Source: Epithemia pelagica (Eukaryota > Protista > Bacillariophyta). From it: a stretch of DNA of 64,000 nt. The stretch is taken from the NCBI GenBank assembly GCA_946965045.2, contig OX337235.1:1426001-1490000 (forward strand), read 5' to 3'. Below, one piece after another: positions 2,896 through 16,058 of the stretch. Position 1 is the stretch's first letter; each line of letters begins with the position of its first letter. Position numbers and translations under genes: made by a program. The notes under the pieces were generated by a model. The model was not told where the DNA came from. It ran no database searches and saw nothing but the letters and a program-made list of their open reading frames with translations.

Positions 2896-4185
2896 CTATC
2901 CAATAAAAGTCGACGTGTTTTGGGCAGTTTTCTGATCCACATAGTTGGAAAACAACGTTTGAAAACGTTGCACATCCTTTTCGGACCGATGAATACGCAA
3001 CAAATGCAAGAGGACCGTACTATACACATCCATTTTACCGGGGTAACAACTGTGCAAACAATCCCCGTCTCGACTTCGGTGACCATCCGGCCGCCGAATG
3101 TTCAAATGGTAGGCATCCAGTACATGGTAGTCCAAACCGGATCGATCGAGTTCGTCCAAGACCAGGAGGTTTTGACGTTGAAAGTGATGCCAGTTGTAGG
3201 TGATTTGAAGCGGAGAATATAAAGTCAAGTTGGCGACATGTTGCTCCATGGTAGCCATATCGTTGACGGGTTGGGTAAAGTTTTGGCACTGAACATGGCC
3301 TGGAACAGTCGTTCTCCAAACCAACTGACAGGTAATATTCATGCGATGACAGATTTGTTGCCATTGATGCAAATGAGGGAAGGTAATGGTTCGAAGGTCA
3401 TGGACCAAGGCTTCGTCCGAAACATAGTGCGCTCCTCGATTCACAACCAATATAACGGGAAAGTTGTCTCGAATCGATTCATTGACATGTTTCAAATACG
3501 GATCATTCCGATATATCAGAGAAGTTGGATTGCCTCGTCCACAGGCATTCTGCATGTGGTTGCGCTTCTCGGATTTACTCCTGTGCTGATCCATTTGATG
3601 GACATGTTCTCCCAGAAGCTGCAGTAGAGAAGAGTAGTGTTCCCACGACAAGGAGTCTCCAATAATGGAAAGAGTCGCATATTGCATCTTTTCACAAAAT
3701 TTAGTAGCATTCCAGGACGTCCATTCACAGGGTTGCGGTGAAAACGAACGAGCATCATCCGGTTGCCACTTCCACGCCCGAAAAGGTTTTGGGTAGTTTT
3801 TGCTAATTTCTTCTCCCTCTTCCGAAAAGCAACGCAGATGCTTGTTGTGGCTCACATAGGGTGGCTTGGACATCCATTCTTCGACCCATGAACCGGACTG
3901 GACTTGTTCACGCGAGCAGAACGGTCTGGTGCTCGCAGGGCGGGAGCTGTTCACGAGGACCGTCTCGGTCGACACAGAAATGACTGGCATTGATTTGTCA
4001 CTGGAACTTGATCGAACCGCCTCTCGATTATGAGGTGCATTCATTTGCTGGACAAGCACTCTTTCTTGATCTTGTTGTGCAGTCATTCTTGATAGAGTCG
4101 CATTCCACATCATACAGTAGAAAAAGAAAAGTCCCATAATACCGGAATATACTCGTAGTAGTAGCTTTCTTCGGTGTAACATCAT
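2896..4185 (-). CDS. TBL/PC-esterase (SGNH-like O-acetyltransferase/esterase) family, type II membrane protein
   Basis: N-terminal TM; C..G.WV and WKWQP..C segments; IIGDSL catalytic Ser motif; C-terminal DCLHSC (DxxH) motif. Confidence 0.75.
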   Translation of the reverse strand: MMLHRRKLLLRVYSGIMGLFFFYCMMWNATLSRMTAQQDQERVLVQQMNAPHNREAVRSSSSDKSMPVISVSTETVLVNSSRPASTRPFCSREQVQSGSWVEEWMSKPPYVSHNKHLRCFSEEGEEISKNYPKPFRAWKWQPDDARSFSPQPCEWTSWNATKFCEKMQYATLSIIGDSLSWEHYSSLLQLLGEHVHQMDQHRSKSEKRNHMQNACGRGNPTSLIYRNDPYLKHVNESIRDNFPVILVVNRGAHYVSDEALVHDLRTITFPHLHQWQQICHRMNITCQLVWRTTVPGHVQCQNFTQPVNDMATMEQHVANLTLYSPLQITYNWHHFQRQNLLVLDELDRSGLDYHVLDAYHLNIRRPDGHRSRDGDCLHSCYPGKMDVYSTVLLHLLRIHRSEKDVQRFQTLFSNYVDQKTAQNTSTFIG

Positions 4186-4863
4186 TCTTCAGGGTTTGAT
4201 TTTTGACTTCATCGTCTTCGCCACCACGGCAAGGATATCTTTTCCGCTCTCCGTCGTCATCCCTTTCACTCACACCTCACCCAAAGCGTCTCCCCCAAGT
4301 TGACCGTTCCACTACCACATTGGTCCGTAGACGCATGTGTCACACCAAATAGTGCGGAAAGAAGGCTCCCCATGCTTGTGGGAGCGTGGAGAGGGCATAA
4401 GTAGTTTTTGGTCGGAGCGGCTTTCTAACTAAGGACAGAGTCACACTGAATTATGCGCGCGCGGCGATACGTCCATGATTTAACGCTTCCTCGCCAAATT
4501 ACACGATTTCTTACGAAATGCTTTCTTTCTATCCTTAGGCGTATATGAACGCCAGCCGGATATCACCTACCGAACGACACGATCATGGCCTCCTCACACA
4601 TCGCCAATTCTATCCTCATATTTTTGGACCCTGGCAAGTAGGTGAAAAGCAACAAACACACTTTCGGCGCACCTCTCTTGTCTTGGATTTGGGGAGTGAA
4701 CGTGTCCAGGAGGAGGCAAGAATAGAAGGGTTCTAAGGTCATTCGTGCAAAGGAGGAATTTGGGATTGAAATCTTTGCGGGAAGCCGAGTTGTTGCAGGA
4801 CGACGATAATTGCCGCAGCAAACGGACATATTTGCCTTGATCACCATTTCATTCATTTTGGTA

Positions 4864-7800
4864 ATGTCATCTGACAATATCGTGCAACCAGACTGTCCTT
4901 CTAGCACAAAAATCATGAAAGAGGGATTGCGAGCGGTATCAGAGATCCCGGGTGGCGAGAGTCGAGAGGATGTATCGTATCGTGACGGAAGGGATGAGCG
5001 AGATGACGGGAACCATGATTCAACACCCAACCGAAAAAAATCCGTATCATCACAACAAGCAGCTGCAGGGGCACAACGGAAAGGCAAAAAGGCACAGGCA
5101 GAAGGTCAACATCAACAGCAGCATCAACAGCAACTCCCCGGGCGCTTCTATCCAGGCAGGCAGCCCCCACACGGTCATTTTCCGATGGGATCAGGAATGC
5201 CTCAAGGGCCTGGCCCATACGGAGGTCCGCCTTACCTCTACGCTGGAGGAAATGGCCACTACCCTCCCCCACCCTACCATCCGCACTTCCACTCCCAAAT
5301 GCCACCCATGCCCCATTTTAATGGAGGCGGCCCGTACCCAGCGCACGGAATGGGCAACCATCAACGCAATACAGGAAACGGAGGTGCATCAAACGGTCCT
5401 TACTCTTCTCATTATGGCAACCATTCTCATCCATACAACTCGAACATGGGACCCAATTCGTTTGGTTCCCATGGCATGCCACCGTCCTATCCCAACATGA
5501 GTACTTCGGACTCCGCATCCATGTCCAGCAAGGGAAGCAAGAGTAGCAAAAAGCGTACGATTGATGGAGTCCACGATACACAGCCGCCTATTCCCCCTAC
5601 GTCTGCTCCTCATGTGTACACCTTTCGTAGAACCGATAGCAACAGCAGCACCACATCTACGGTGACCGCTGGAAACAACACAAGCATTGAGACGCATGGG
5701 ACAGAAGAAAGCCACAGCCGTCACGAAAACCATCACCATACACGTACTGGCGACGCGCTTGGACCACCAGGTGGATACGACGATCACGACAGTTACCACA
5801 ATGAAGGTCGTCCAATGAGGACGCGATACCATCGACGTGATTATTCTGCCGATGCATCCACCACTTCGAGCCTCAGCGCCGGATTTTCTCTCGAATCGTA
5901 TGAAGGTCCCAGAGGTACGAACGACAAAACTACTAATCGTCGATGCTTTTTGTTTTCAACAGACTCTCACATGAATTCGACTCTTCGTACAAACAGATCC
6001 CATGGCAACAGATGCACCCATTCGAAAGTCGTCTCCTAAACGGCTGAAAGGTGGTGAGGGAGAGCCACTCCTGGTGGACACAAACATGCGTCCTCCTTCT
6101 GTGGCATCTCACGACGCTGATCAATCGACAAGATTCGAACAGCTTTCTATTGGTGTGAAAGAGGAACCTCCAACAACCAAGAGCGAGAGCAGCGACGAAA
6201 GCAGGAATCAAACACTCTTCCTGTCTCTTTCGACGTCACCCATCAACGCGAACGGAGCTGACATTGACGCCACACCAATCAGCAAGAACACAACAAAATT
6301 GTCCGACCTTAACAAGGCCAAGAGAAACAGCATATTCAAAAAGAAAGGAACCAGTGTTCTCCGAAGTCTGGAAGTCTCCACGTCCGATGTGGCTGCTCCA
6401 GCCAACAGTCCAACACCTCCCGTACACGGAGAGCTTGGAGATAGCGACACAATGACGGATGACCACAGTACTCTTGATCGTCATTTGAGAGGCCAGTCAT
6501 TTACTCCAGTGAACCACCTTCCAAGCAGCGCAAGTGAACAGGTCTCAAATCATGCGGATGGTCAGTTCTCCATTCCTCCAGCACTGTCATGGAGTATCGC
6601 AGGTGATACTCCTTCCCTGGGGGAACTTCAAGAGTGTGAATGGGAGGAAGAGAGCAAATCAAAACATGTTGCAACTGAGCAGAAGATAAAGCCAAGCTCA
6701 ACAGCCGACTCTCACGACGATACTGGAGACATGAGTATCAGTCCACATGACTTTCATTTGTGGAAGGAGGAGCACGAGTTGGTAGACCAAGCAATCGGGG
6801 GAGCTACCACTCCGTTGCCCGCTTTCTTTGATTCCAGGGGCAACGAAAGTAGCGAAAACCAAACGAACTATGAACCCAAAGCTACCAAGAAGCATCATGG
6901 GGATGATGCACGCCCAACATTCATAACCAGTACCAACCGTCACACTTCTCAACACGGTCGACCAATGCAATCGCAATGGTCAAAGCATGATCAAATGGGG
7001 CATACCATGCCTCCCACGCCAATGTACCCAAGCTCGGAATATCGAGATGACTGTTTCCCCATCGTACGAAGTCCATATGGAGGTGATCGTCGGGATCAAA
7101 TTGACGGGGCTGGGGCCTTTCCTTTCTTTCCTCATCCAGGTAATATTCATTCGAACGACAGGGTACGAAACCTACGTGGTCGGATGCCAGCGAACGCGCA
7201 TTTTCCTCCCATGCTCCATATTCCGCCTCCCATGACTGCACAACTCCCAATGACATCCCCCATGGCACTGCCAAATAAAGCTGGACTGTGGAGTCCACAT
7301 GGAGGTCTACCACCGATTAACAGTCCTCATCATCTGACTTCTCCAATGAATAGTATGTCTCAAACAAAGAGGAAGTGTGTTCCTCTGAAACCACCTATAC
7401 CGTCGAAATTCCAGGGTGATCCAGAAAAGGTGAAGAACGTGCCTGTTCCCGAGTTCACAAGTCTTGTCAACTTCCCTACCCATATGTCTCAAAAGCAAGC
7501 TGTTAATTTGCCTGAGGGAATGCGATGCTGTGTCATGTGTGGGAATGCATGCCCAGCATCGAATGGTGGAAAAAACAAAAAGAAGAAAGCTGGAGAAGGT
7601 GGAGGGCTTGCACAACGCAGCAGCAATAGCCAAGACTTGATCGGGGAGAGAGCCAATGGATATGCACAAATCCCAACACAAAACAAGGGACTCTGTACTT
7701 TATGTGATGTCAATGTGTGGGTTGTTGTCTCGAGTGGACTTGAAATAAAATGGTGCAAGGGCTGCAAAAACTTCCGACCATGGGCCGCCTTTGGTGACAA

Positions 7801-7915
7801 GGGTTTGGCTACCAAATGTTTACGTTGTCGTGAACGTCAGCGTGAAAAATATGCTCTGCAGAAAGAAGAAAAAGAAAAGGCAAGGAATCAAGCTGTTGTG
7901 AAATCAGCCAGTTAA
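4864..7915 (+). CDS. Low-complexity protein with C-terminal Cys-rich SBP-like zinc finger (putative transcription factor), 2 exons
   Basis: ORFs 4810-6039 and 6002-7915 join in frame through a GT-AG intron at 5915-5996. C-terminus CCVMC...CTLC...GLEIKWCKGCKNF...KCLRCRERQR, followed by a basic tail. Start could be ATG 4864 or 4915. Confidence 0.65.
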
Positions 7916-8479
7916 GAACGTTAAGGAACAAAGCGGTTGTCAAATCAGCAAGCTAATAACTATAGTATGAATATGGGGAAAGACAACCACATGGCTGCTC
8001 GTCAGTAGCAGCAGCAACCTTTAATAGCAAACAACTACTCCTACTGTGTTTTCCTTTATCTGGATGTCCTGATAGCACAGGACAATGTTTGTGTCCCACG
8101 TCCCAAGGCGTTGAACGATGAGCTTGTGATGCCGAATCTCTAATCAAGGATGTTTACAGCCATATCTATCTTTCCTAATTGACTCAAAAATTCTGTTGCG
8201 GAGGTGACGACTTGTCCGTGATGACGTTTCTATTCATGTTGCCGTCGACGTTCTTCCTTCCATGCGGCCTCATCGTAAAATGTATCGATCGTGTGAGCGT
8301 GGCCATTATGCTGGTTTTGCATCCACACCACTTATGTCGTGGCATGAACTCGGACGTCCAACTCAGCTGGAGTTTCACTCGATACCAATGGTGGGGTCAT
8401 GTTGCTAAAGGCGTTGGAAGAATGAATGACCCGTGAAATGTGGACTCATAAGTGGCTCGTCTTCGCTGACTGCCATTCG

Positions 8480-9970: not shown

Positions 9971-10417
9971 GCTATTCAAGGAAGCGAATTTCAGGGGCAA
10001 AGAATCTCAACGAAAGGATCACCGAGTGGTACTGTCACCTCTCTCAGGTCGAATCTGATAACTTGCTCAGCCTTTGATGCAGATCGACCTGATTCTTTTG
10101 GCAACAAGAGAAGTTTGCCCGACGGTCGAATAATCAGAAACAGCAACGTCCATTGCTGTCGCTCCTTGTCGGGTTTGAGCTGTCTGTTGTTGACTCGTTG
10201 CAACAGAAGCGACCAGAAGAGATGACGACAGCAAAGAATACTTCTTTCGCTAGGAATATCGACGGCGGAGACAGAAGGCATAGCAGTATAGACACCACTT
10301 CAAAACTAACTCCATACCAGACTGTGTAGGTAGTTCGTCTCACATTTTTATACTACAGTATGAATTTATTGTACGACCGGGAAGTAGTTTCGTGCGAGTC
10401 GCGCGGTGTCCCTCTCG

Positions 10418-10458
10418 TGTGTGACACTTGTGCGACACTTGTGTGACACTTTGTGACA
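10418..10458. repeat. Four short TG(T/C)GACA(CT) repeats in the mini-element body (also ~10804-10844)
   Basis: gtgtgacacttgtgcgacacttgtgtgacactttgtgaca read directly. Confidence 0.8.
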
Positions 10459-10511
10459 TGGCTTCTAGGAATTTCTCACTACCTACACAGCTTGATAGGG
10501 AGTAAGTTTAC

Positions 10512-10685
10512 TACTTCCCTGTGTCTGGCCGTCCTCTCGCGTCGGGCGCGCCCGGCTTGTCGGGAGAATGACTCGACGGGCAATTGTCTTGTCGGGCGTG
10601 CGCCCTCCTCGGCCATTGCCCTCCTCGTCATTCTACCCTCCGCGCCGGGCGGTCCCTCCTTGAAAGGACTCGACACCGGGAAGTA
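10512..10685. repeat. Modular imperfect hairpin of mini-element copy 1 (copy 2: 10898-11071)
   Basis: Nested inverted pairs tacttccctgtgtc/gacaccgggaagta, cgcccggc/gccgggcg, agaatgac/gtcattct and gggcaat/attgccc. Confidence 0.85.
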
Positions 10686-11702
10686 TTAATACTAACTCCA
10701 TACCAGACTGTGTAGGTAGTTCGTCTCACATTTTTATACTACAGTAGGAATTTATTGTACGACCGGGAAGTAGTTTCGTGCGAGTCGCGCGGTGTCCCTC
10801 TCGTGTGTGACACTTGTGCGACACTTGTGTGACACTTTGTGACATGGCTTCTAGGAATTTCTCACTACCTACACAGCTTGATAGGGAGTAAGTTTACTAC
10901 TTCCCTGTGTCTGGCCGTCCTCTCGCGTCGGGCGCGCCCGGCTTGTCGGGAGAATGACTCGACGGGCAATTGTCTTGTCGGGCGTGCGCCCTCCTCGGCC
11001 ATTGCCCTCCTCGTCATTCTACCCTCCGCGCCGGGCGGTCCCTCCTTGAAAGGACTCGACACCGGGAAGTATTAATACTACCTACCATCTCTTATCTCGC
11101 TCTAGTAGGAGTAGGAGTAGGTAGGAGTACGATTTACTCCTAACTCCATACCTCTAGCTATGCAGGTAGTTCTGCTCACATTTTTATAGTAGAGTACGAT
11201 ATTATTGTACAAGCGGGAGGTAGTAATTACCGAAAATTCGCGCGATTCGCGCACAAACACGCCGGGCGAGCAAACCAAGGGGAAAGAGCGCACCACGAAA
11301 AACGGACGCAACGATGGCAACGACGATACCAACAATACACGAAGCGAGAGACAAGTATAAGAAAGAGCAAGTTGAATGTGAGAATAGGCACAAAAACAGC
11401 AATCAAACAGTATTCGAGACAAGTGAGTACTTACAGTTCTAGAAGGATCAACCATTGAATAATGGGATCACTGTGAATGCAACAGACAATTGGTTAGTCA
11501 AACAAGACAGAGGAAGGTCGAAAATACAGCCATGGTTACTCACCATACCAGCAACTAGGGCGACTGTTGGAAGAAGTAGAAAATACTGATAGTGGACAGT
11601 AGCAGCACTGTAAGTCTGTGCAAATAAGAAAAAGTTTGTGAGAAAAACATGAACATACAAAACAAACAAGCAGCAGGTGACGAAAACTCACCACCCAACC
11701 CA

Positions 11703-14700
11703 TCAAGAAGACCTTTTCTTGTGGGATTTCTTGTACTTGCGTGGATGGGAGGGCTGTTGGAACTGAACAGGTTGAAAATGGGGCTGCTGGATCATGGTTT
11801 GTTGCATGGTGGTCGGCATGATGGAAGGCTGTTGTGCGTAGTTCGGAGCAACCATCCCAAACTGCATTGAGGTCGTAGGCATGTACGGTTGTTGCATAAA
11901 CCCATTCATCATGGGCTGCTGTGTAGGGTAGGTGGGTTGCAACATCGTCGGCATTGGAGCAAGTGCTGGTTGTTGTTGTTGTTGTGTTACGATGAAAGAC
12001 GAGGGTTGTTGTTGTTGTGGGATGAAGGTAGGAGCAATCATACCATTCGAGCGGAACCCACCGTGTGGAGAATACATGGATGACGATGACGATGACAAAG
12101 AAGTGGGGGTGTTGCATTGAGGCATGTGCGAGGCGACAACTGACTTCGGCGGCTTCTTCTTTGGAGGAGGAGCCTGGGACTCAATCATGTTCGAGGCTTG
12201 TTGGCTGTTGGTGCCAAAAGCCTCCCAGTCAAATCCTTTGAAGAGAGAATCCGTCAAATCATCATCTTCTTCTAGAGTCAATGGTTGGAAAACTGCAGAC
12301 AACGCCTTCTTCTCGTGGTGAGACTTTGGTTTCGTTTCCACGGGTTCTGAAAAGAAAACAGAAGAATGAGAGAAGAAACAACGATAGCAATCAACCAAAA
12401 AATGGACTTACCTTGTTTGACTGTGACAGGCGAGGCATCGTTATACCAGTTTGCTTTTAAGACCGCGGCGTAGGATTCCGGTCCAAACTCTTGGTATGCA
12501 AAGTTTGCCTCATCAGTCTTGTGGCGTCCGAATTTGTTCACGATCTTTTGTGGAGCACCAGATTGTGCCACGTTGGAGATTCCGGTACGGCGGCCCGTCC
12601 GCGCAGTCGTTCGTTTCCAGTCTTCTAAGCCGCACCTCTTGAAGAGGAGCTTGGCATTTTCGTTCGGCCAGTTCTTGCCGAGTTGACCGATTGGGCGTGT
12701 CGGAGGCGGTCCTGTGAAACCATTTGCGACTGCTTTGTTGTAGCGAGCCATGGTTTCTTTCGACGTGTCTCGCACCAACATGGTGCCAGCCCACCACTTG
12801 TCATTCGCAGGAGAGGGACGAGCCTTGCGTTCCTTGTCCGAAGCAATATTGAGAAACAGTAGACCCGTCCAGCCAGGAGGTAGGGCGTGCTCGATCCAGT
12901 ACTGGAGTAATTTGTACGTGGACCACGGGTCGTCGGGGTTGTCGACAATCATATTGAGCTCGCGCCCGTCTTCAGCGTCAAGAGTGGGGTTATTCAATGA
13001 CAGCTTCGAGCATTTCTCGCGGCTACACTCTTTGAGTTTGTACGCGGGTAGGCCCGCCAACGAGCCATACTCCTCTGAAAGTGCGGGGATGTGGACTAAG
13101 TCTGCAACTCTAACTTTACAGGTCTGTAAGAAACGAGGCAAAAAACGTGAGAAATCACATGTCCGAAGAAACCAAACCAACAATCAGACAGTACTAACCT
13201 CGATGGTACCACGTGGACCGAAATCACGTTGGAACTTATAAACTACTAGTCGTAAAAGGTCGATGGGGACCGAAAAAGGATTCAGTTTCGGGTTTGCCTT
13301 GTTCCGAAACAGGTACTCGTCATTCTGCACAATCTTGGCTTTCTTCGGGCGGCGACCATAGTCCGGACGAGCCTCGGACTCTTCTTCAAACTGCTTTTTG
13401 CAATAAGCATGGTATGAACGGGGCAGGTTTTGAAGATCCAGACTCCCGTACTGAATGCCGTTGGTATGAAGCACAGAGAACACATGGTCCAGCATCTTTT
13501 TCAAAGCGTTCGGTTGATACACCTGCCCGGCCTTGGTGTACAGATTCAAGACGAAAACGTAAAGTACAAGATTCAGACACTTTGCTTTCTCCGGGGTCTT
13601 GTATCCTCGCAACAACGTAAAAAGACGGAGGGTTTGCTTTGATGGGTTATCAGGATCGGCGATGACTTCGGTGAGTTTGTGTAAGTCTTGATGTCGGGCC
13701 ATGATGTTCAGAAAGCGTTCGAATGTTCTTGCCTTCTCCCGCTCATACCCTGCCGTGTTCATTGACAGGTCAGAGAAATTTACGTTGCGAGCCCCGTCTC
13801 CATAGACGCGCTCGTTCGAGATCGTGGCATAAGAGGCCCATGCCTCAAGATCGTCGGGGGTATTGACTACCTCGGGTAGCGAGTTGCTCGAAAGGAAGTC
13901 AAAGGTCACCCGCCCTGTTGCTTCGTCGACAACAAGGGTGGACCGAGAAGACGCAGCTTGGGCAGCCATCTTTAGAGAGGGAGCAATGGGAACGGACGTT
14001 TCATTGGGAGGCACTTGCATCGACGCCCTGCAAAACACAGCAATCAACGAGACAGTTAGAACAGGAAGAAACATACAGACAATCCACTGCAAGTCAAAAC
14101 CAACGTACTGAGGGGCCACATTCGGAGCGATGGGAACGGAGGTTCCATTGGGAGGCAGAACAGAGGTTTCATTGGGAGGCGGAACGGAGGTTCCATTGGG
14201 AGGCACTTGCATGGACGCCCTGCAAAGCACATCAATCAACGAGACAGTTAGAACTGGATGAACCATGAAAGCAATCCACTAATGCAAAGCAAAGTCAACG
14301 TACTGAGGGGCCACAGCAATGGATTCCACATTCGGAGCTTCCAAAGTTCCAACAGGAAGAACAGCATCCCTGCAATACGAACAATCAAACAGAGTGAGAT
14401 GGGAACATGACAATACACAAAGAAACAACAATCATCAGTGACTTCTTACCAGTTCTGAGGAGGTTCGGACAGAGGAACCGGTGCAGGTTTCTTGTTCCCC
14501 TGTTTTGGAACAGGGATGTTGACGGATCGTTTCTGGAGGAGCGATGACAAAGGGTTGCTTTTCTTGCAAACAGTCGACGCAGCCTTGCTGGATTGACGAG
14601 TCTTTACAGCAGCAGGACGATGAGGCGGTGCGTTCTCCTTGTTTGCGGCGGCGGCGGCAGCGGCTTTGTTAGCGTTGCGAGTCTTCATGGCGAGCTTCCT

Positions 14701-15099
14701 TCTGCTTATCAAATGACACAACAAATGAGAAATGAGAAATGACAGGAAGAATGAGGATCGGTGTGACGGTCGAAGGAAATTTGAATCGGTAAGTGCGACC
14801 GGGAAGATTTCGACGCGAAAAGGAAGACGACCATGGTCGAAATTGACGAAAAACGGGCCAACGAGCAAGAACAAATACGACAATCAAACAAAAACTTACA
14901 GTTTGCTCGACCTTTTGAGCATCCAGGAGTCAGAGGAGTTACTGTGCTCCTCTGAGCTCCCAGTGCAAAGATCAATCCGCTCAACCCACCTTCCTTCCCA
15001 ATTGTTCATGTTCTCGGGTTCGTCAAAGAGGTACATGTAGGAAGTTGACGAGTCCGAAGACTCAGAATCAGACTCCGAGACCAAATCAATGATGTTCAT
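11703..15099 (-). CDS. Tyrosine recombinase (Crypton/DUF3504-like), 7 exons, ~937 aa, Q-rich C-terminal tail
   Basis: Phase-consistent GT-AG introns at 14702-14899, 14370-14449, 14220-14303, 14028-14108, 13124-13198 and 12347-12411. Catalytic-type motifs: GPRG (R), ARTGRRTG (HxxR position), FGRHKT (H/W) and NFAYQE (Y). The start may instead be ATG 14688 (MKTRN). Confidence 0.8.
14028..14305 (-). repeat. Tandem duplication of an intron+exon unit (~192 bp period) inside the recombinase gene
   Basis: Introns 14028-14108 and 14220-14303 share long stretches (caatcaacgagacagttagaac, caacgtactgaggggccaca). Both downstream exons begin ASMQVPPN(G/E)TSVP. Confidence 0.85.
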
Positions 15100-15387
15100 G
15101 CTATTATACACACCAATCAAACACTATTCTATAGGAAGAGAGCCACTTGGAATGGTAATGCCATTGCTGTCGGTCTTCCTTCCTAATTTCCGGATCGAGA
15201 GGAAAGGGAGGTCGACGAGATCTCTGGGGACTGGGGCCTATATAATCCGAGGAACGGAAGGTTTTAAAATTACTTAGAGACGAAAATTTCCTATGCGACT
15301 TCCAAATTTCATCAACGGACATGTCCTCTCTATTAAATATAGAGAGGTGAGCAGAACTACCTGCATATCTAGGTATGGAGTAAGCAG

Positions 15388-15563
15388 AATACTCCCCTGT
15401 ATTTTTCAGTCCTTTCTCGTCGGGCGCCCGGCTAGTCGGGAGAATGACTCGTCGGGCACGTGTCTTGTCGGGCATGCGCCCTCCGTGCCACGTGCCCTCC
15501 TCGTCATTCTACCCTCCACGCCGGGCGACCCTCCTCAAAAGGACTGATATACCGTGAAGTATT
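15388..15563. repeat. Modular terminal hairpin of the autonomous element
   Basis: GTCGGG at 15419, 15435, 15451, 15467 and CCCTCC at 15479, 15495, 15512, 15529; the spacers on the two arms are reverse complements. Confidence 0.9.
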
Positions 15564-16058
15564 CCTACTACTCCTAGGAGTACGAATTACGAATACCTTT
15601 CTGAAGAGGAAGAGCAACTTACCATTTTAGTAGATTAAATACTCCTAGGAGAAGCATTACTACGAGCATGGTGAGCACGAAATGTCGATCAATCTAGTAT
15701 TCTGTGTTCTGAGAAAGTAAAAGAAGGGCACCTGAGATTGCCTCTATGTTTGACTTGGACTCACAACGTGCCAGTCAAGGGAACCACTGGCGCTTTACAA
15801 CTGACTTTAGCGTGTTGCTGTCTCCGTGCATACAAACTATCATTCTCATCTACGTGTTCACCTTCCCTCCATAAATGTTGTAGGACTTGAAAATATTATA
15901 GGAGTATTCGTCCTGACCAGTCAATACGACGTTTGGACCTACGAGTTCTGGTTCTAAATTCGAGCTTGTCCCAATGACGACGATGCGTCGACACACGCAT
16001 ACGCAAGTGAAGCGTTCTATCTTCTATAGCGTTGAATGTCAACCCCAAGCTGAACAAA

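What the first reader, a model, noticed from the sequence alone, without database searches (positions are those of the whole stretch)
11140..15570. Crypton-like tyrosine-recombinase transposon with asymmetric inverted repeats and a terminal hairpin
The element has one YR gene and no RT/RNaseH, so it is not DIRS-like. Cryptons are generally described as lacking TIRs and having only short direct repeats. Here the left terminus (11143-11179) is inverted against a subterminal site (15347-15381; perfect 21 bp + 10 bp), followed by ~180 bp of hairpin upstream of the recombinase gene. That layout recalls Helitron2/Helentron asymmetric TIR + hairpin ends, but the enzyme is a YR. In the 386 bp relative both inverted-repeat copies read TGTGTAGGTAGT, whereas both copies here read TATGCAGGTAGT, so the pair co-evolves. 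This is the best candidate in the window for an undescribed system.
Basis: partly seen in the sequence, partly recalled or inferred. Interest (0 to 1): 0.85.

Follow-up and report, generated by a model that had tools for sequence, protein, structure and literature searches.

The report
Diatom Crypton transposon with split palindrome
This is a recently mobile jumping gene of the Crypton type, cut and pasted by a tyrosine recombinase; its odd "inverted repeat plus hairpin" ends are two parts of one long conserved palindrome that becomes whole only when the element's ends are joined.

Summary

**What it is**
- The element holds one seven-exon gene on the minus strand, giving a 937-aa protein.
- Both protein domains fold like a tyrosine recombinase, and R..K..RxxR..H..Y is conserved.
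- It has no RT, DDE or HUH gene, so it is a Crypton-type element.

**Evidence of recent mobility**
- A second copy (L001) is 99.2% identical and sets the ends.
- The other haplotype (L009) lacks the element.
- L009 also lacks the neighbouring 386-bp dimer, leaving a single ACTA at that site.
- The crossover repeat is CTA on the + strand (TAG on the gene strand).

**The "asymmetric IR + hairpin"**
- It is one palindrome of about 245 nt, cut off-centre by the crossover.
- Across six junctions from five sequence lineages there are 90 paired columns. Sixteen have changes on both sides.
- A T·T mismatch sits at the crossover in all of them.
- The hairpin is built of GACGAG/GGAGGG boxes that also occur in distant relatives from other organisms.

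**Verdict:** a new structural variant of a known kind, not a new system. Earlier follow-ups in this scan (s1-235302, s1-235320) reported the same split palindrome on other DNA of this genome.

**Unexplained**
- The empty allele lacks 36 bp more than expected.
- How the palindrome is used is unknown.

The parts
11140..15570 (-). Autonomous element, 4431 bp including both CTA repeats
   Evidence: 99.2% identical to L001:3382-7808 over window 15571-11140, with unrelated flanks. Absent from the other haplotype L009 and from contigs of three runs.
11140..11142 (.). Left copy of the crossover repeat CTA (TAG on the gene strand)
   Evidence: Junction comparison of the window copy, L001, L007, L005, L008 and the short dimer.
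15568..15570 (.). Right copy of the crossover repeat CTA (ACTA with 15567)
   Evidence: Same comparison.
11143..11188 (.). Terminal arm of the palindrome (3' end of the element on the gene strand)
   Evidence: Pairs with 15338-15387. Co-varies with it across lineages.
15338..15387 (.). Subterminal arm of the palindrome, between the hairpin and the gene
   Evidence: Carries CTT where the terminal arm has the crossover CTA, in all lineages.
15388..15567 (.). Inner hairpin of the palindrome: four GGAGGG-type boxes facing four CCCGAC(G)AG boxes on the gene strand
   Evidence: 86-90% identical between lineages whose coding DNA is about 66% identical. The same box vocabulary is in L013 and L012.
14900..15099 (-). 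Exon 1 (start codon at 15099); acidic Ser-rich N-terminus
   Evidence: Splice model gives one open frame of 937 aa.
14450..14701 (-). Exon 2
14304..14369 (-). Exon 3
14109..14219 (-). Exon 4 (part of a 192-bp exon+intron duplication)
   Evidence: (D3).
13199..14027 (-). Exon 5: core-binding domain and the first catalytic Arg (GPRG)
   Evidence: Arg invariant in 10 relatives. Model best matches the Cre N-terminal domain, Z 8.0.
12412..13123 (-). Exon 6: catalytic domain (K, RxxR, H, Y)
   Evidence: Seven differences from L001 in this exon, none changing the protein.
11706..12346 (-). Exon 7: Q/P/M-rich tail with basic end; the range includes the stop codon at 11706-11708
10305..10690 (-). Non-autonomous 386-bp element, copy 1
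   Evidence: Keeps the 84-nt 3' end and the 220-nt hairpin + arm of the family, with unrelated filler.
10691..11076 (-). Non-autonomous 386-bp element, copy 2, head to tail with copy 1 through one ACTA
   Evidence: 99.7% identical to copy 1. Both are absent from L009, which has a single ACTA (joint 10304->11077, 4 shared letters).
11077..11126 (.). Host DNA between the two insertions (starts with the ACTA repeat)
   Evidence: Present in the empty haplotype L009.
11127..11139 (.). 13 bp next to the left end that are absent from the empty haplotype
   Evidence: Unexplained.
15571..15590 (.). 20 bp next to the right end that are absent from the empty haplotype
   Evidence: Unexplained.

Best explanation
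A young, probably still active Crypton-type DNA transposon of a diatom, and next to it two copies of its 386-bp non-autonomous relative.

Shown: the element encodes a single two-domain tyrosine recombinase.

Inferred mechanism:
- The recombinase excises the element as a circle by recombining the two CTA repeats (TAG on the gene strand) at its ends.
- It re-inserts the circle at a genomic TAG, usually G-TAG, so that one repeat comes from the target and one from the element.
- The cis-acting site is an imperfect palindrome of about 245 nt that spans the joined ends.
- Because the crossover lies off-centre in one arm, integration leaves about 45 nt of that arm at the 3' end. The rest (hairpin plus the other arm) stays at the 5' end, upstream of the gene.
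- Resident ends remain good targets, which gives head-to-tail arrays.
For: Protein.
- Six GT-AG introns give one 937-aa frame.
- It aligns over residues 236-717 with full-length diatom relatives.
- The catalytic-domain model (pLDDT 84) has only tyrosine recombinases and type IB topoisomerases in its top 18 structural matches. Cre scores Z 6.5.
- The N-terminal model best matches the Cre N-terminal domain, Z 8.0.
- The family profile hits only XerA in the PDB, aligning RxxR, H and Y.
- K, R, R, R and Y are nearly invariant and the first Arg is invariant; the His stands in the conserved RHK.

Mobility.
- The second copy is 99.2% identical with the same ends and unrelated flanks.
- Both copies keep the open frame.
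- All 7 differences in the catalytic exon are silent.
- The other haplotype lacks the element and lacks the dimer precisely.
- Contigs of three runs show the same joints.
- Introns are kept in both copies, so copying is through DNA.

Site.
- The natural head-to-tail junction folds as one palindrome (z -7.1).
- In six junctions there are 90 consensus pairs, 16 with changes on both sides, and 95% of cells are paired.
- The ends are more conserved than the coding DNA.
- The same layout is found at L004, L005, L006, L007 and L008.
- In L008 a short and a long element share a single TAGT.
Against: - No circle junction was seen, but only contigs were available and they drop rare forms.
- No expression data exist for this organism.
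- The empty haplotype lacks 36 bp more than a clean CTA crossover predicts.
- The repeat is only 3 bp in the two long copies, because the fourth base differs.
- Pfam does not recognise the protein and Foldseek gave no significant match. The fold call therefore rests on moderate Z-scores plus motifs.
- The contig ctg1345l of the ENA assembly starts inside short copy 2 (window 10980). The dimer could therefore owe something to an assembly join.
Confidence: 0.8

Rival explanations
1. The palindrome works as folded DNA. One strand, or an extruded cruciform, forms a hairpin that the recombinase recognises by shape, as integron integrases do with attC and XerCD with the CTX phage genome. The mismatch at the crossover and the purine-purine loops would then mark the strand and the cleavage point.
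For: - A T·T mismatch at the crossover (GGAGT-T-AG facing CT-T-ACTCC) is kept in all lineages, including the 45% relative L006.
- Of 128 mismatched cells other than G·T and A·C, 113 are purine-purine on the gene strand and 15 are pyrimidine-pyrimidine.
- In the boxes these mismatches are tandem GA/AG steps clamped by GGG:CCC.
- The gene strand folds 1.5-4.3 kcal/mol better than its complement in three elements.
- The box pairs recur in distant relatives from other organisms.
Against: - There is no excess of G·T over A·C pairs once the alignment is made without favouring pairs (27 against 19).
- The same pattern fits double-stranded protein sites placed as direct repeats inside an inverted scaffold.
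- Arms can be kept alike by repair or conversion without any folding.
- There is no experimental datum.
Confidence: 0.2
2. The element is mainly an extrachromosomal circular plasmid, like the yeast 2-micron circle with FLP and inverted repeats, that integrates now and then. The palindrome would serve replication, copy-number control or a junction promoter.
For: - Size of about 4.4 kb, a single recombinase gene and inverted repeats.
- A conserved TATAAAAAT lies just inside the 3' arm and points across the junction.
- Internal contig depth is about 1.6 times that of the flanks.
Against: - There is no replication gene.
- The extra depth is explained by at least two chromosomal copies.
- Copies have diverged by 0.8% with a CpG-decay pattern typical of chromosomal DNA.
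- No circular contig was found.
Confidence: 0.1
3. The inverted repeats are ordinary TIRs of a cut-and-paste element moved in trans by a DDE transposase, and the recombinase is cargo.
For: Inverted repeats and a short MITE-like relative.
Against: - One repeat is 230 bp inside the element, not at its end.
- The flanking repeat is a constant TAG present once in the empty site, not a variable duplication.
- Every relative with these ends carries the recombinase.
Confidence: 0.03
4. A DIRS-like retroelement that lost its reverse transcriptase and kept inverted repeats and a complementary internal region.
For: Recombinase plus inverted repeats. The N-terminal model also matches the ALOG domain, which to my recollection has been traced to DIRS1-type elements (not checked here).
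Against: - There is no RT, RNase H or methyltransferase.
- Six introns are retained in both copies.
- No relative among the loci fetched has an RT inside the element.
Confidence: 0.02

Closest known systems
CryptonS elements of stramenopiles (Kojima and Jurka 2011, PMC3212892)
   Same: Recombinase-only DNA transposon. The host group includes a diatom. The gene has introns. Short terminal direct repeats match the target. Copy number of the autonomous form is low.
   Different: CryptonS is described with 5-6-bp repeats, mostly TATGG, and no inverted repeats. Here the repeat is TAG(T), TATGG lies 6 bp inside the 3' end in this lineage only, and a conserved split palindrome of about 245 nt is present. 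Sequence relationship could not be tested because Repbase was not available.
Fungal Cryptons / CryptonF (Goodwin model, as summarised in PMC3212892 and PMC13465315)
   Same: Proposed circle excision and integration at a short shared sequence. No target-site duplication.
   Different: No GCR1_C domain. No Pfam match. Long structured ends. An abundant 386-bp derivative.
Integron attC sites and the CTX phage attachment site (from general knowledge)
   Same: A tyrosine recombinase paired with an imperfect palindrome whose mismatches are conserved.
   Different: Those systems are bacterial and proven to use folded single strands. Here folding is only an inference, and the palindrome is several times longer.
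DIRS1-type elements (ITRs plus internal complementary region)
   Same: Recombinase and inverted repeats whose parts become contiguous in a circle.
   Different: No reverse transcriptase. Introns are retained. The repeat layout differs.
Helitron2/Helentron ends
   Same: Asymmetric inverted repeat plus a subterminal hairpin; tandem arrays.
   Different: No Rep/helicase. Insertion uses a constant 3-bp shared repeat. The enzyme class is unrelated.
Starship elements (Captain recombinase, DUF3435)
   Same: Eukaryotic recombinase-driven elements with short direct repeats and sometimes asymmetric TIRs. A circular intermediate was recently reported (bioRxiv 10.64898/2026.09.21.753150, abstract only seen).
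   Different: Starships are giant cargo carriers of fungi. No DUF3435 match here.

Membership tests
Tyrosine recombinase superfamily | Two-domain fold (core-binding plus catalytic) | tested here: met
   Catalytic model: the top 18 matches are all recombinases or topoisomerase IB, with Cre at Z 6.5, rmsd 3.4, 132 aligned. N-terminal model: Cre residues 37-132 at Z 8.0, rmsd 2.5.
Tyrosine recombinase superfamily | Catalytic R, K, H/R-x-x-R, H/W, Y | tested here: met
   R in GPRG is invariant. K37, R175, R178, R200 and Y210 are nearly invariant, and H201 stands in the conserved RHK. The profile alignment to XerA puts RxxR on HxxR, H on H and Y on Y.
Pfam Phage_integrase (PF00589) | Score above the curated cut-off | tested here: not met
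   No hit for the window's pieces. 2 of 23 relatives hit weakly, best E 0.0021. The remote relative P0068 passes.
Pfam DUF3504 / DUF3435 | Match to the family model | tested here: not met
   No match. QRICH1 (structure 9hjt_H; to my knowledge, not checked here, a DUF3504 protein) is a structural match at Z 6.1 and 6.6, no better than Cre.
Crypton (order) | Encodes a tyrosine recombinase and no RT, DDE or HUH enzyme | tested here: met
   One gene fills the element. No Pfam domain in the minus-strand ORFs tested.
Crypton (order) | Short direct repeats that reflect a sequence shared with the target, not a duplication | tested here: met
   Constant TAG at six insertions. The empty site of the dimer has one ACTA.
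Crypton (order) | No terminal inverted or long repeats (descriptive feature in PMC3212892 and PMC13465315) | tested here: not met
   45-50-nt arms and a 180-nt hairpin, conserved in all relatives.
Crypton (order) | Circular intermediate | tested here: inconclusive
   No end-to-end joint in contigs of three runs. Contigs drop rare forms.
CryptonS | TATGG-type 5-6-bp termini | tested here: not met
   The ends are TAG(T). TATGG lies 6 bp inside and is not kept in L004 or L005.
CryptonS | Recombinase groups with CryptonS; conserved C-terminal region | not testable with these tools
   No Repbase sequences at hand. Of the ten hits whose sources were looked up, the named ones are two diatoms and one green alga.
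DIRS / Ngaro / VIPER | Reverse transcriptase and RNase H | tested here: not met
   Introns are retained in both copies.
Helitron2 / Helentron | Rep (HUH) and helicase protein | tested here: not met
   Absent.

The most novel reading that the evidence does not exclude
The long palindrome is used as folded DNA. The gene-strand hairpin would be stabilised by tandem G·A pairs in conserved (GAS)n boxes clamped by GGG:CCC, and marked by a T·T mismatch at the cleavage point. It would be the real substrate or licensing signal for the recombinase. That would be the first eukaryotic transposon working like an integron attC site or the CTX phage site.
Probability: 0.2. Interest if true: 0.85.

Novelty: new variant of a known kind. 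Interest (0 to 1): 0.6.

Why it matters
- **Defined ends.** Crypton ends have been called cryptic, because the only mark described is 4-6 shared bases. How the recombinase finds its own DNA is unknown. This lineage offers a large, conserved, co-varying site with a fixed crossover.
- **A testable system.** It has two intact young copies, a precise empty allele, head-to-tail arrays and a seemingly abundant 386-bp derivative. These are the materials needed to test the circle model at the bench.
- **A new cis-element.** The box module of the hairpin is conserved in relatives from other organisms that share under 40% of the protein. I found it described nowhere.
- **Annotation.** TIR-based tools would misplace the ends or file the short form as a MITE of a DDE family.

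Tried and rejected
- **Pfam on the raw ORF pieces:** nothing.
- **phmmer of the catalytic exon against the PDB:** nothing.
- **Foldseek against the PDB:** no significant match, though QRICH1, SSV1 integrase and Flp are in the list.
- **Rfam on 10200-15700:** nothing.
- **Circle junction in reads:** the only "goes back" joints link the centres of different hairpin copies, not the element's ends.
- **Wobble test for strand-specific folding:** G·T 27 against A·C 19 once pairs are defined without bias. This is not informative. The earlier 27 against 7 was an artefact of the folding program.
- **Empty allele of the L001 copy:** two neighbour-gene look-ups returned only the filled contig.
- **Diatom plasmids of Cylindrotheca:** the search listed only plastid-genome and unrelated papers. 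I opened none and dropped the lead.
- **The 16-bp repeat TAGGAGTACGA(T/A)TTAC at 11122 and 15575 as a long shared core:** not supported, because the empty allele contains no copy of it.
- **A loxP-like core at the joined ends** (GGAGT, 10-11 nt, ACTYC): the boxes are there but are only 5 nt long, so I do not lean on them.
Full report
**Observation.**
- Positions 11143-11179 match the reverse complement of 15347-15381 in perfect blocks of 21 and 11 nt. Shuffled ends never gave more than 12.
- The tool extends the pair to 11137-11188 / 15338-15387.
- The stretch 15404-15551 is a strong hairpin on either strand, with z -7.7 and -8.6.
- Both arms of the 386-bp relative read TGTGTAGGTAGT. Both arms of the long element read TATGCAGGTAGT.

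**Gene and protein.**
- Six GT-AG introns of 65-198 nt join seven minus-strand exons into one frame of 937 aa.
- Residues 236-717 align with full-length relatives across the exon 5/6 join. One relative comes from an Entomoneis paludosa record with MMETSP-style identifiers and one from Cylindrotheca fusiformis.
- The family is small. Only 80 proteins out of 1.84 billion representatives match at E <= 0.001. Pfam does not see it.
- The fold is nevertheless clear.
  - The catalytic exon (model pLDDT 84) has only tyrosine recombinases and type IB topoisomerases among its 18 best structural matches. Cre, XerA, an archaeal Xer and QRICH1 score Z 6.1-6.5.
  - Exon 5 (pLDDT 76) best matches the N-terminal domain of Cre at Z 8.0, then ALOG, QRICH1, IntI and XerA.
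  - The family profile hits one PDB sequence, XerA. Its RxxR aligns on HxxR, and H and Y align on H and Y.
  - K37, R175, R178, R200 and Y210 of exon 6 are nearly invariant, with H201 in the conserved RHK.
  - The Arg of GPRG in exon 5 is invariant in ten relatives.
- The Z-scores are moderate. The call rests on their consistency together with the motifs.

**Ends and mobility.**
- A second copy (L001, another 2-Mb contig of ENA assembly ERZ21939226) is 99.2% identical over window 15571-11140 and unrelated beyond.
- Both copies keep the frame (937 and 936 aa). All seven differences in the catalytic exon are silent, which argues for selection on the enzyme.
- A contig carrying the same left and right neighbour genes (L009, ctg1336l; 98.7-99.3% identical) is the other haplotype, and it is empty.
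- In L009 the two 386-bp copies are missing exactly, and one ACTA is left.
- Contigs of three public runs from one study show the same two joints: 10304->11077 with 4 shared letters, and 11126->15591.
- On the gene strand every insertion examined ends in GGAGT-TAG. The 5' junctions read flank-TAG(T).
- These insertions are the window copy, L001, L007, L005, the L008 short and long elements, and the dimer. The L004 element shows the same 3' end. The base before the 5' TAG is G in 5 of 6.
- The repeat is therefore a constant shared sequence, as in the Crypton model, and not a duplicated target.

**One palindrome, not three features.**
- At the natural head-to-tail junction of the two short copies, the subterminal arm, the hairpin and the terminal arm fold as one structure of about 245 nt (z -7.1).
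- I joined the ends of five elements in silico and added that natural junction. This gave win-long, L007 (83% protein identity), L008-long and L005 (about 60%) and two copies of the short family.
- The consensus structure has 90 pairs. Fifty never vary, 16 change on both sides, and 95% of cells are paired.
- The variable core reads TATGCAGG, TATGTAGG, TGTGTAGG, TATAAAGT or TATGAAAG, always the same in both arms.
- Related sequences can inflate such counts, and the arms could be kept alike by repair. The symmetry is nevertheless maintained while the sequence drifts.
- L006 (45%) has the same layout with a different sequence.
- The ends are 81-90% identical between lineages whose most conserved coding DNA is 66-67% identical.
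- One asymmetry is fixed everywhere. The terminal arm has CTA (the crossover) where the inner arm has CTT. A folded strand would therefore carry a T·T or A·A mismatch at the crossover.

**The hairpin's boxes.**
- On the gene strand the left arm carries GAGGAGGG-type boxes and the right arm carries CCCGACGAG-type boxes.
- GGG pairs with CCC, and the rest face each other as tandem G·A/A·G steps.
- I counted mismatches on an alignment that does not favour pairs. Of 128 cells other than G·T and A·C, 113 are purine-purine and 15 are pyrimidine-pyrimidine.
- The gene strand folds 1.5-4.3 kcal/mol better than its complement in three elements.
- The same box pairs stand upstream of the recombinase gene in metagenomic relatives from other organisms. 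These are L013 (27% protein identity, intronless) and L012.
- I cannot say whether these boxes are protein sites on duplex DNA or elements of a folded strand.

**Neighbours.**
- The 386-bp element keeps 84 nt of the 3' end and 220 nt of the 5' end around unrelated filler.
- Summed contig depth over it is two to three orders of magnitude above the flanks. This points to a large family, but the tool warns that the figure is not a copy number.
- In L008 a short and a long element lie head to tail and share one TAGT. Arrays are therefore a trait of the family.
- In the window the dimer and the long element are separate insertions 50-60 bp apart, because the DNA between them is in the empty haplotype.

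**Mechanism.**
- Shown:
  - a tyrosine-recombinase fold and motifs;
  - DNA-level copying, since introns are kept;
  - polymorphic insertions;
  - a constant TAG repeat, with one copy at the only empty site that is clean;
  - a conserved palindrome across the joined ends.
- Inferred:
  - excision as a circle by recombination of the two TAGs;
  - integration at G-TAG;
  - resident ends acting as preferred targets.
- Open: how the palindrome is read.

**Comparison with known elements.**
- The closest kind is CryptonS of oomycetes and Phaeodactylum. It is described with 5-6-bp repeats, mostly TATGG, and without inverted repeats (PMC3212892).
- A 2026 paper still states that Cryptons lack TIRs (PMC13465315).
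- My searches found no account of a Crypton palindrome.
- Membership in CryptonS could not be tested without Repbase.
- Two earlier follow-ups of this scan (s1-235302, s1-235320) describe a split palindrome and TAGT repeats in other Crypton copies of this genome. I reached the same reading independently before reading them, and tested it here.

**Unexplained or uncertain.**
- The empty haplotype reads GGTAGGA|GAATACC. It therefore lacks 11127-15590, which is the element plus 13 bp on the left and 20 bp on the right.
- Three readings remain:
  - an older 36-bp indel in a repeat-rich site that resembles the element's own GGAGT/ACTCC boxes, which I think most likely;
  - a deletion after excision;
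  - flanks carried in from a donor site.
- The ENA contig ctg1345l begins at window 10980, inside short copy 2. The dimer needs raw-read confirmation, though its two copies differ at one base.

Noticed in passing
window 11127-11139 and 15571-15590; L009:13290-13345: The empty haplotype lacks 36 bp more than the element. The missing flanks hold two near-identical 16-mers (TAGGAGTACGA(T/A)TTAC at 11122 and 15575) and a 14-bp perfect palindrome TACTCCTAGGAGTA at 15569-15582. A similar motif lies 70 bp downstream at 15640.
   Followed up: partly
window introns 14702-14899, 14370-14449, 14220-14303, 14028-14108, 13124-13198, 12347-12411: All six introns carry (T/G)TGATTG. In introns 2-4 it lies 13-17 nt before the 3' AG. 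It may be the branch site of this organism, or a shared origin of the introns.
   Followed up: no
window 11140-15571 against L001:3382-7808, with L007 as outgroup: Of 12 changes assigned to the window copy, 9 are CpG to TpG or CpA. This is the pattern expected if the copy is cytosine-methylated.
   Followed up: partly
window 15040-15099 (minus strand): The protein starts with IIDLV followed by an acidic Ser/Asp run. This looks like a SUMO-interaction motif. Some CryptonS elements carry a Ulp1-type peptidase (PMC3212892).
   Followed up: no
window 13989-14280: A 192-bp tandem duplication copies an exon start together with its intron, giving the repeated peptide ASMQVPPN(G/E)TSVP.
   Followed up: no
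L004:1681-3847: An element with 29-nt TIRs (93% complementary) and a gene hitting Pfam DDE_1 sits inside the hairpin of a related Crypton, cutting off its outer base.
   Followed up: no
L008:2972-3350 and 3347-7930: A 380-bp non-autonomous copy lies directly head to tail with a 4.6-kb autonomous element of another lineage, sharing one TAGT. Its arm core differs by one base from that of the short family.
   Followed up: partly
L012:1429-8591 (JGI metagenome contig): A relative with 36-nt inverted repeats (94%) 7.1 kb apart, an array of CGACGAGGAGGG / CCCGACGAGGAG boxes at 1540-1700, and several extra ORFs. It may be a cargo-carrying form.
   Followed up: no
L013:1-160 and 3387-3475: An intronless 935-aa relative from a metagenome has the same box hairpin upstream of the gene and a second 35-nt-arm hairpin downstream of it.
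   Followed up: partly
window 10980: Contig ctg1345l of ENA assembly ERZ21939226 starts here, inside short copy 2. The window therefore comes from a join or from another assembly version.
   Followed up: partly
window 11180-11230 (minus strand): A conserved TATAAAAAT lies just inside the 3' arm and points across the end. It could drive transcription into the hairpin and gene only in tandem or circular forms.
   Followed up: no
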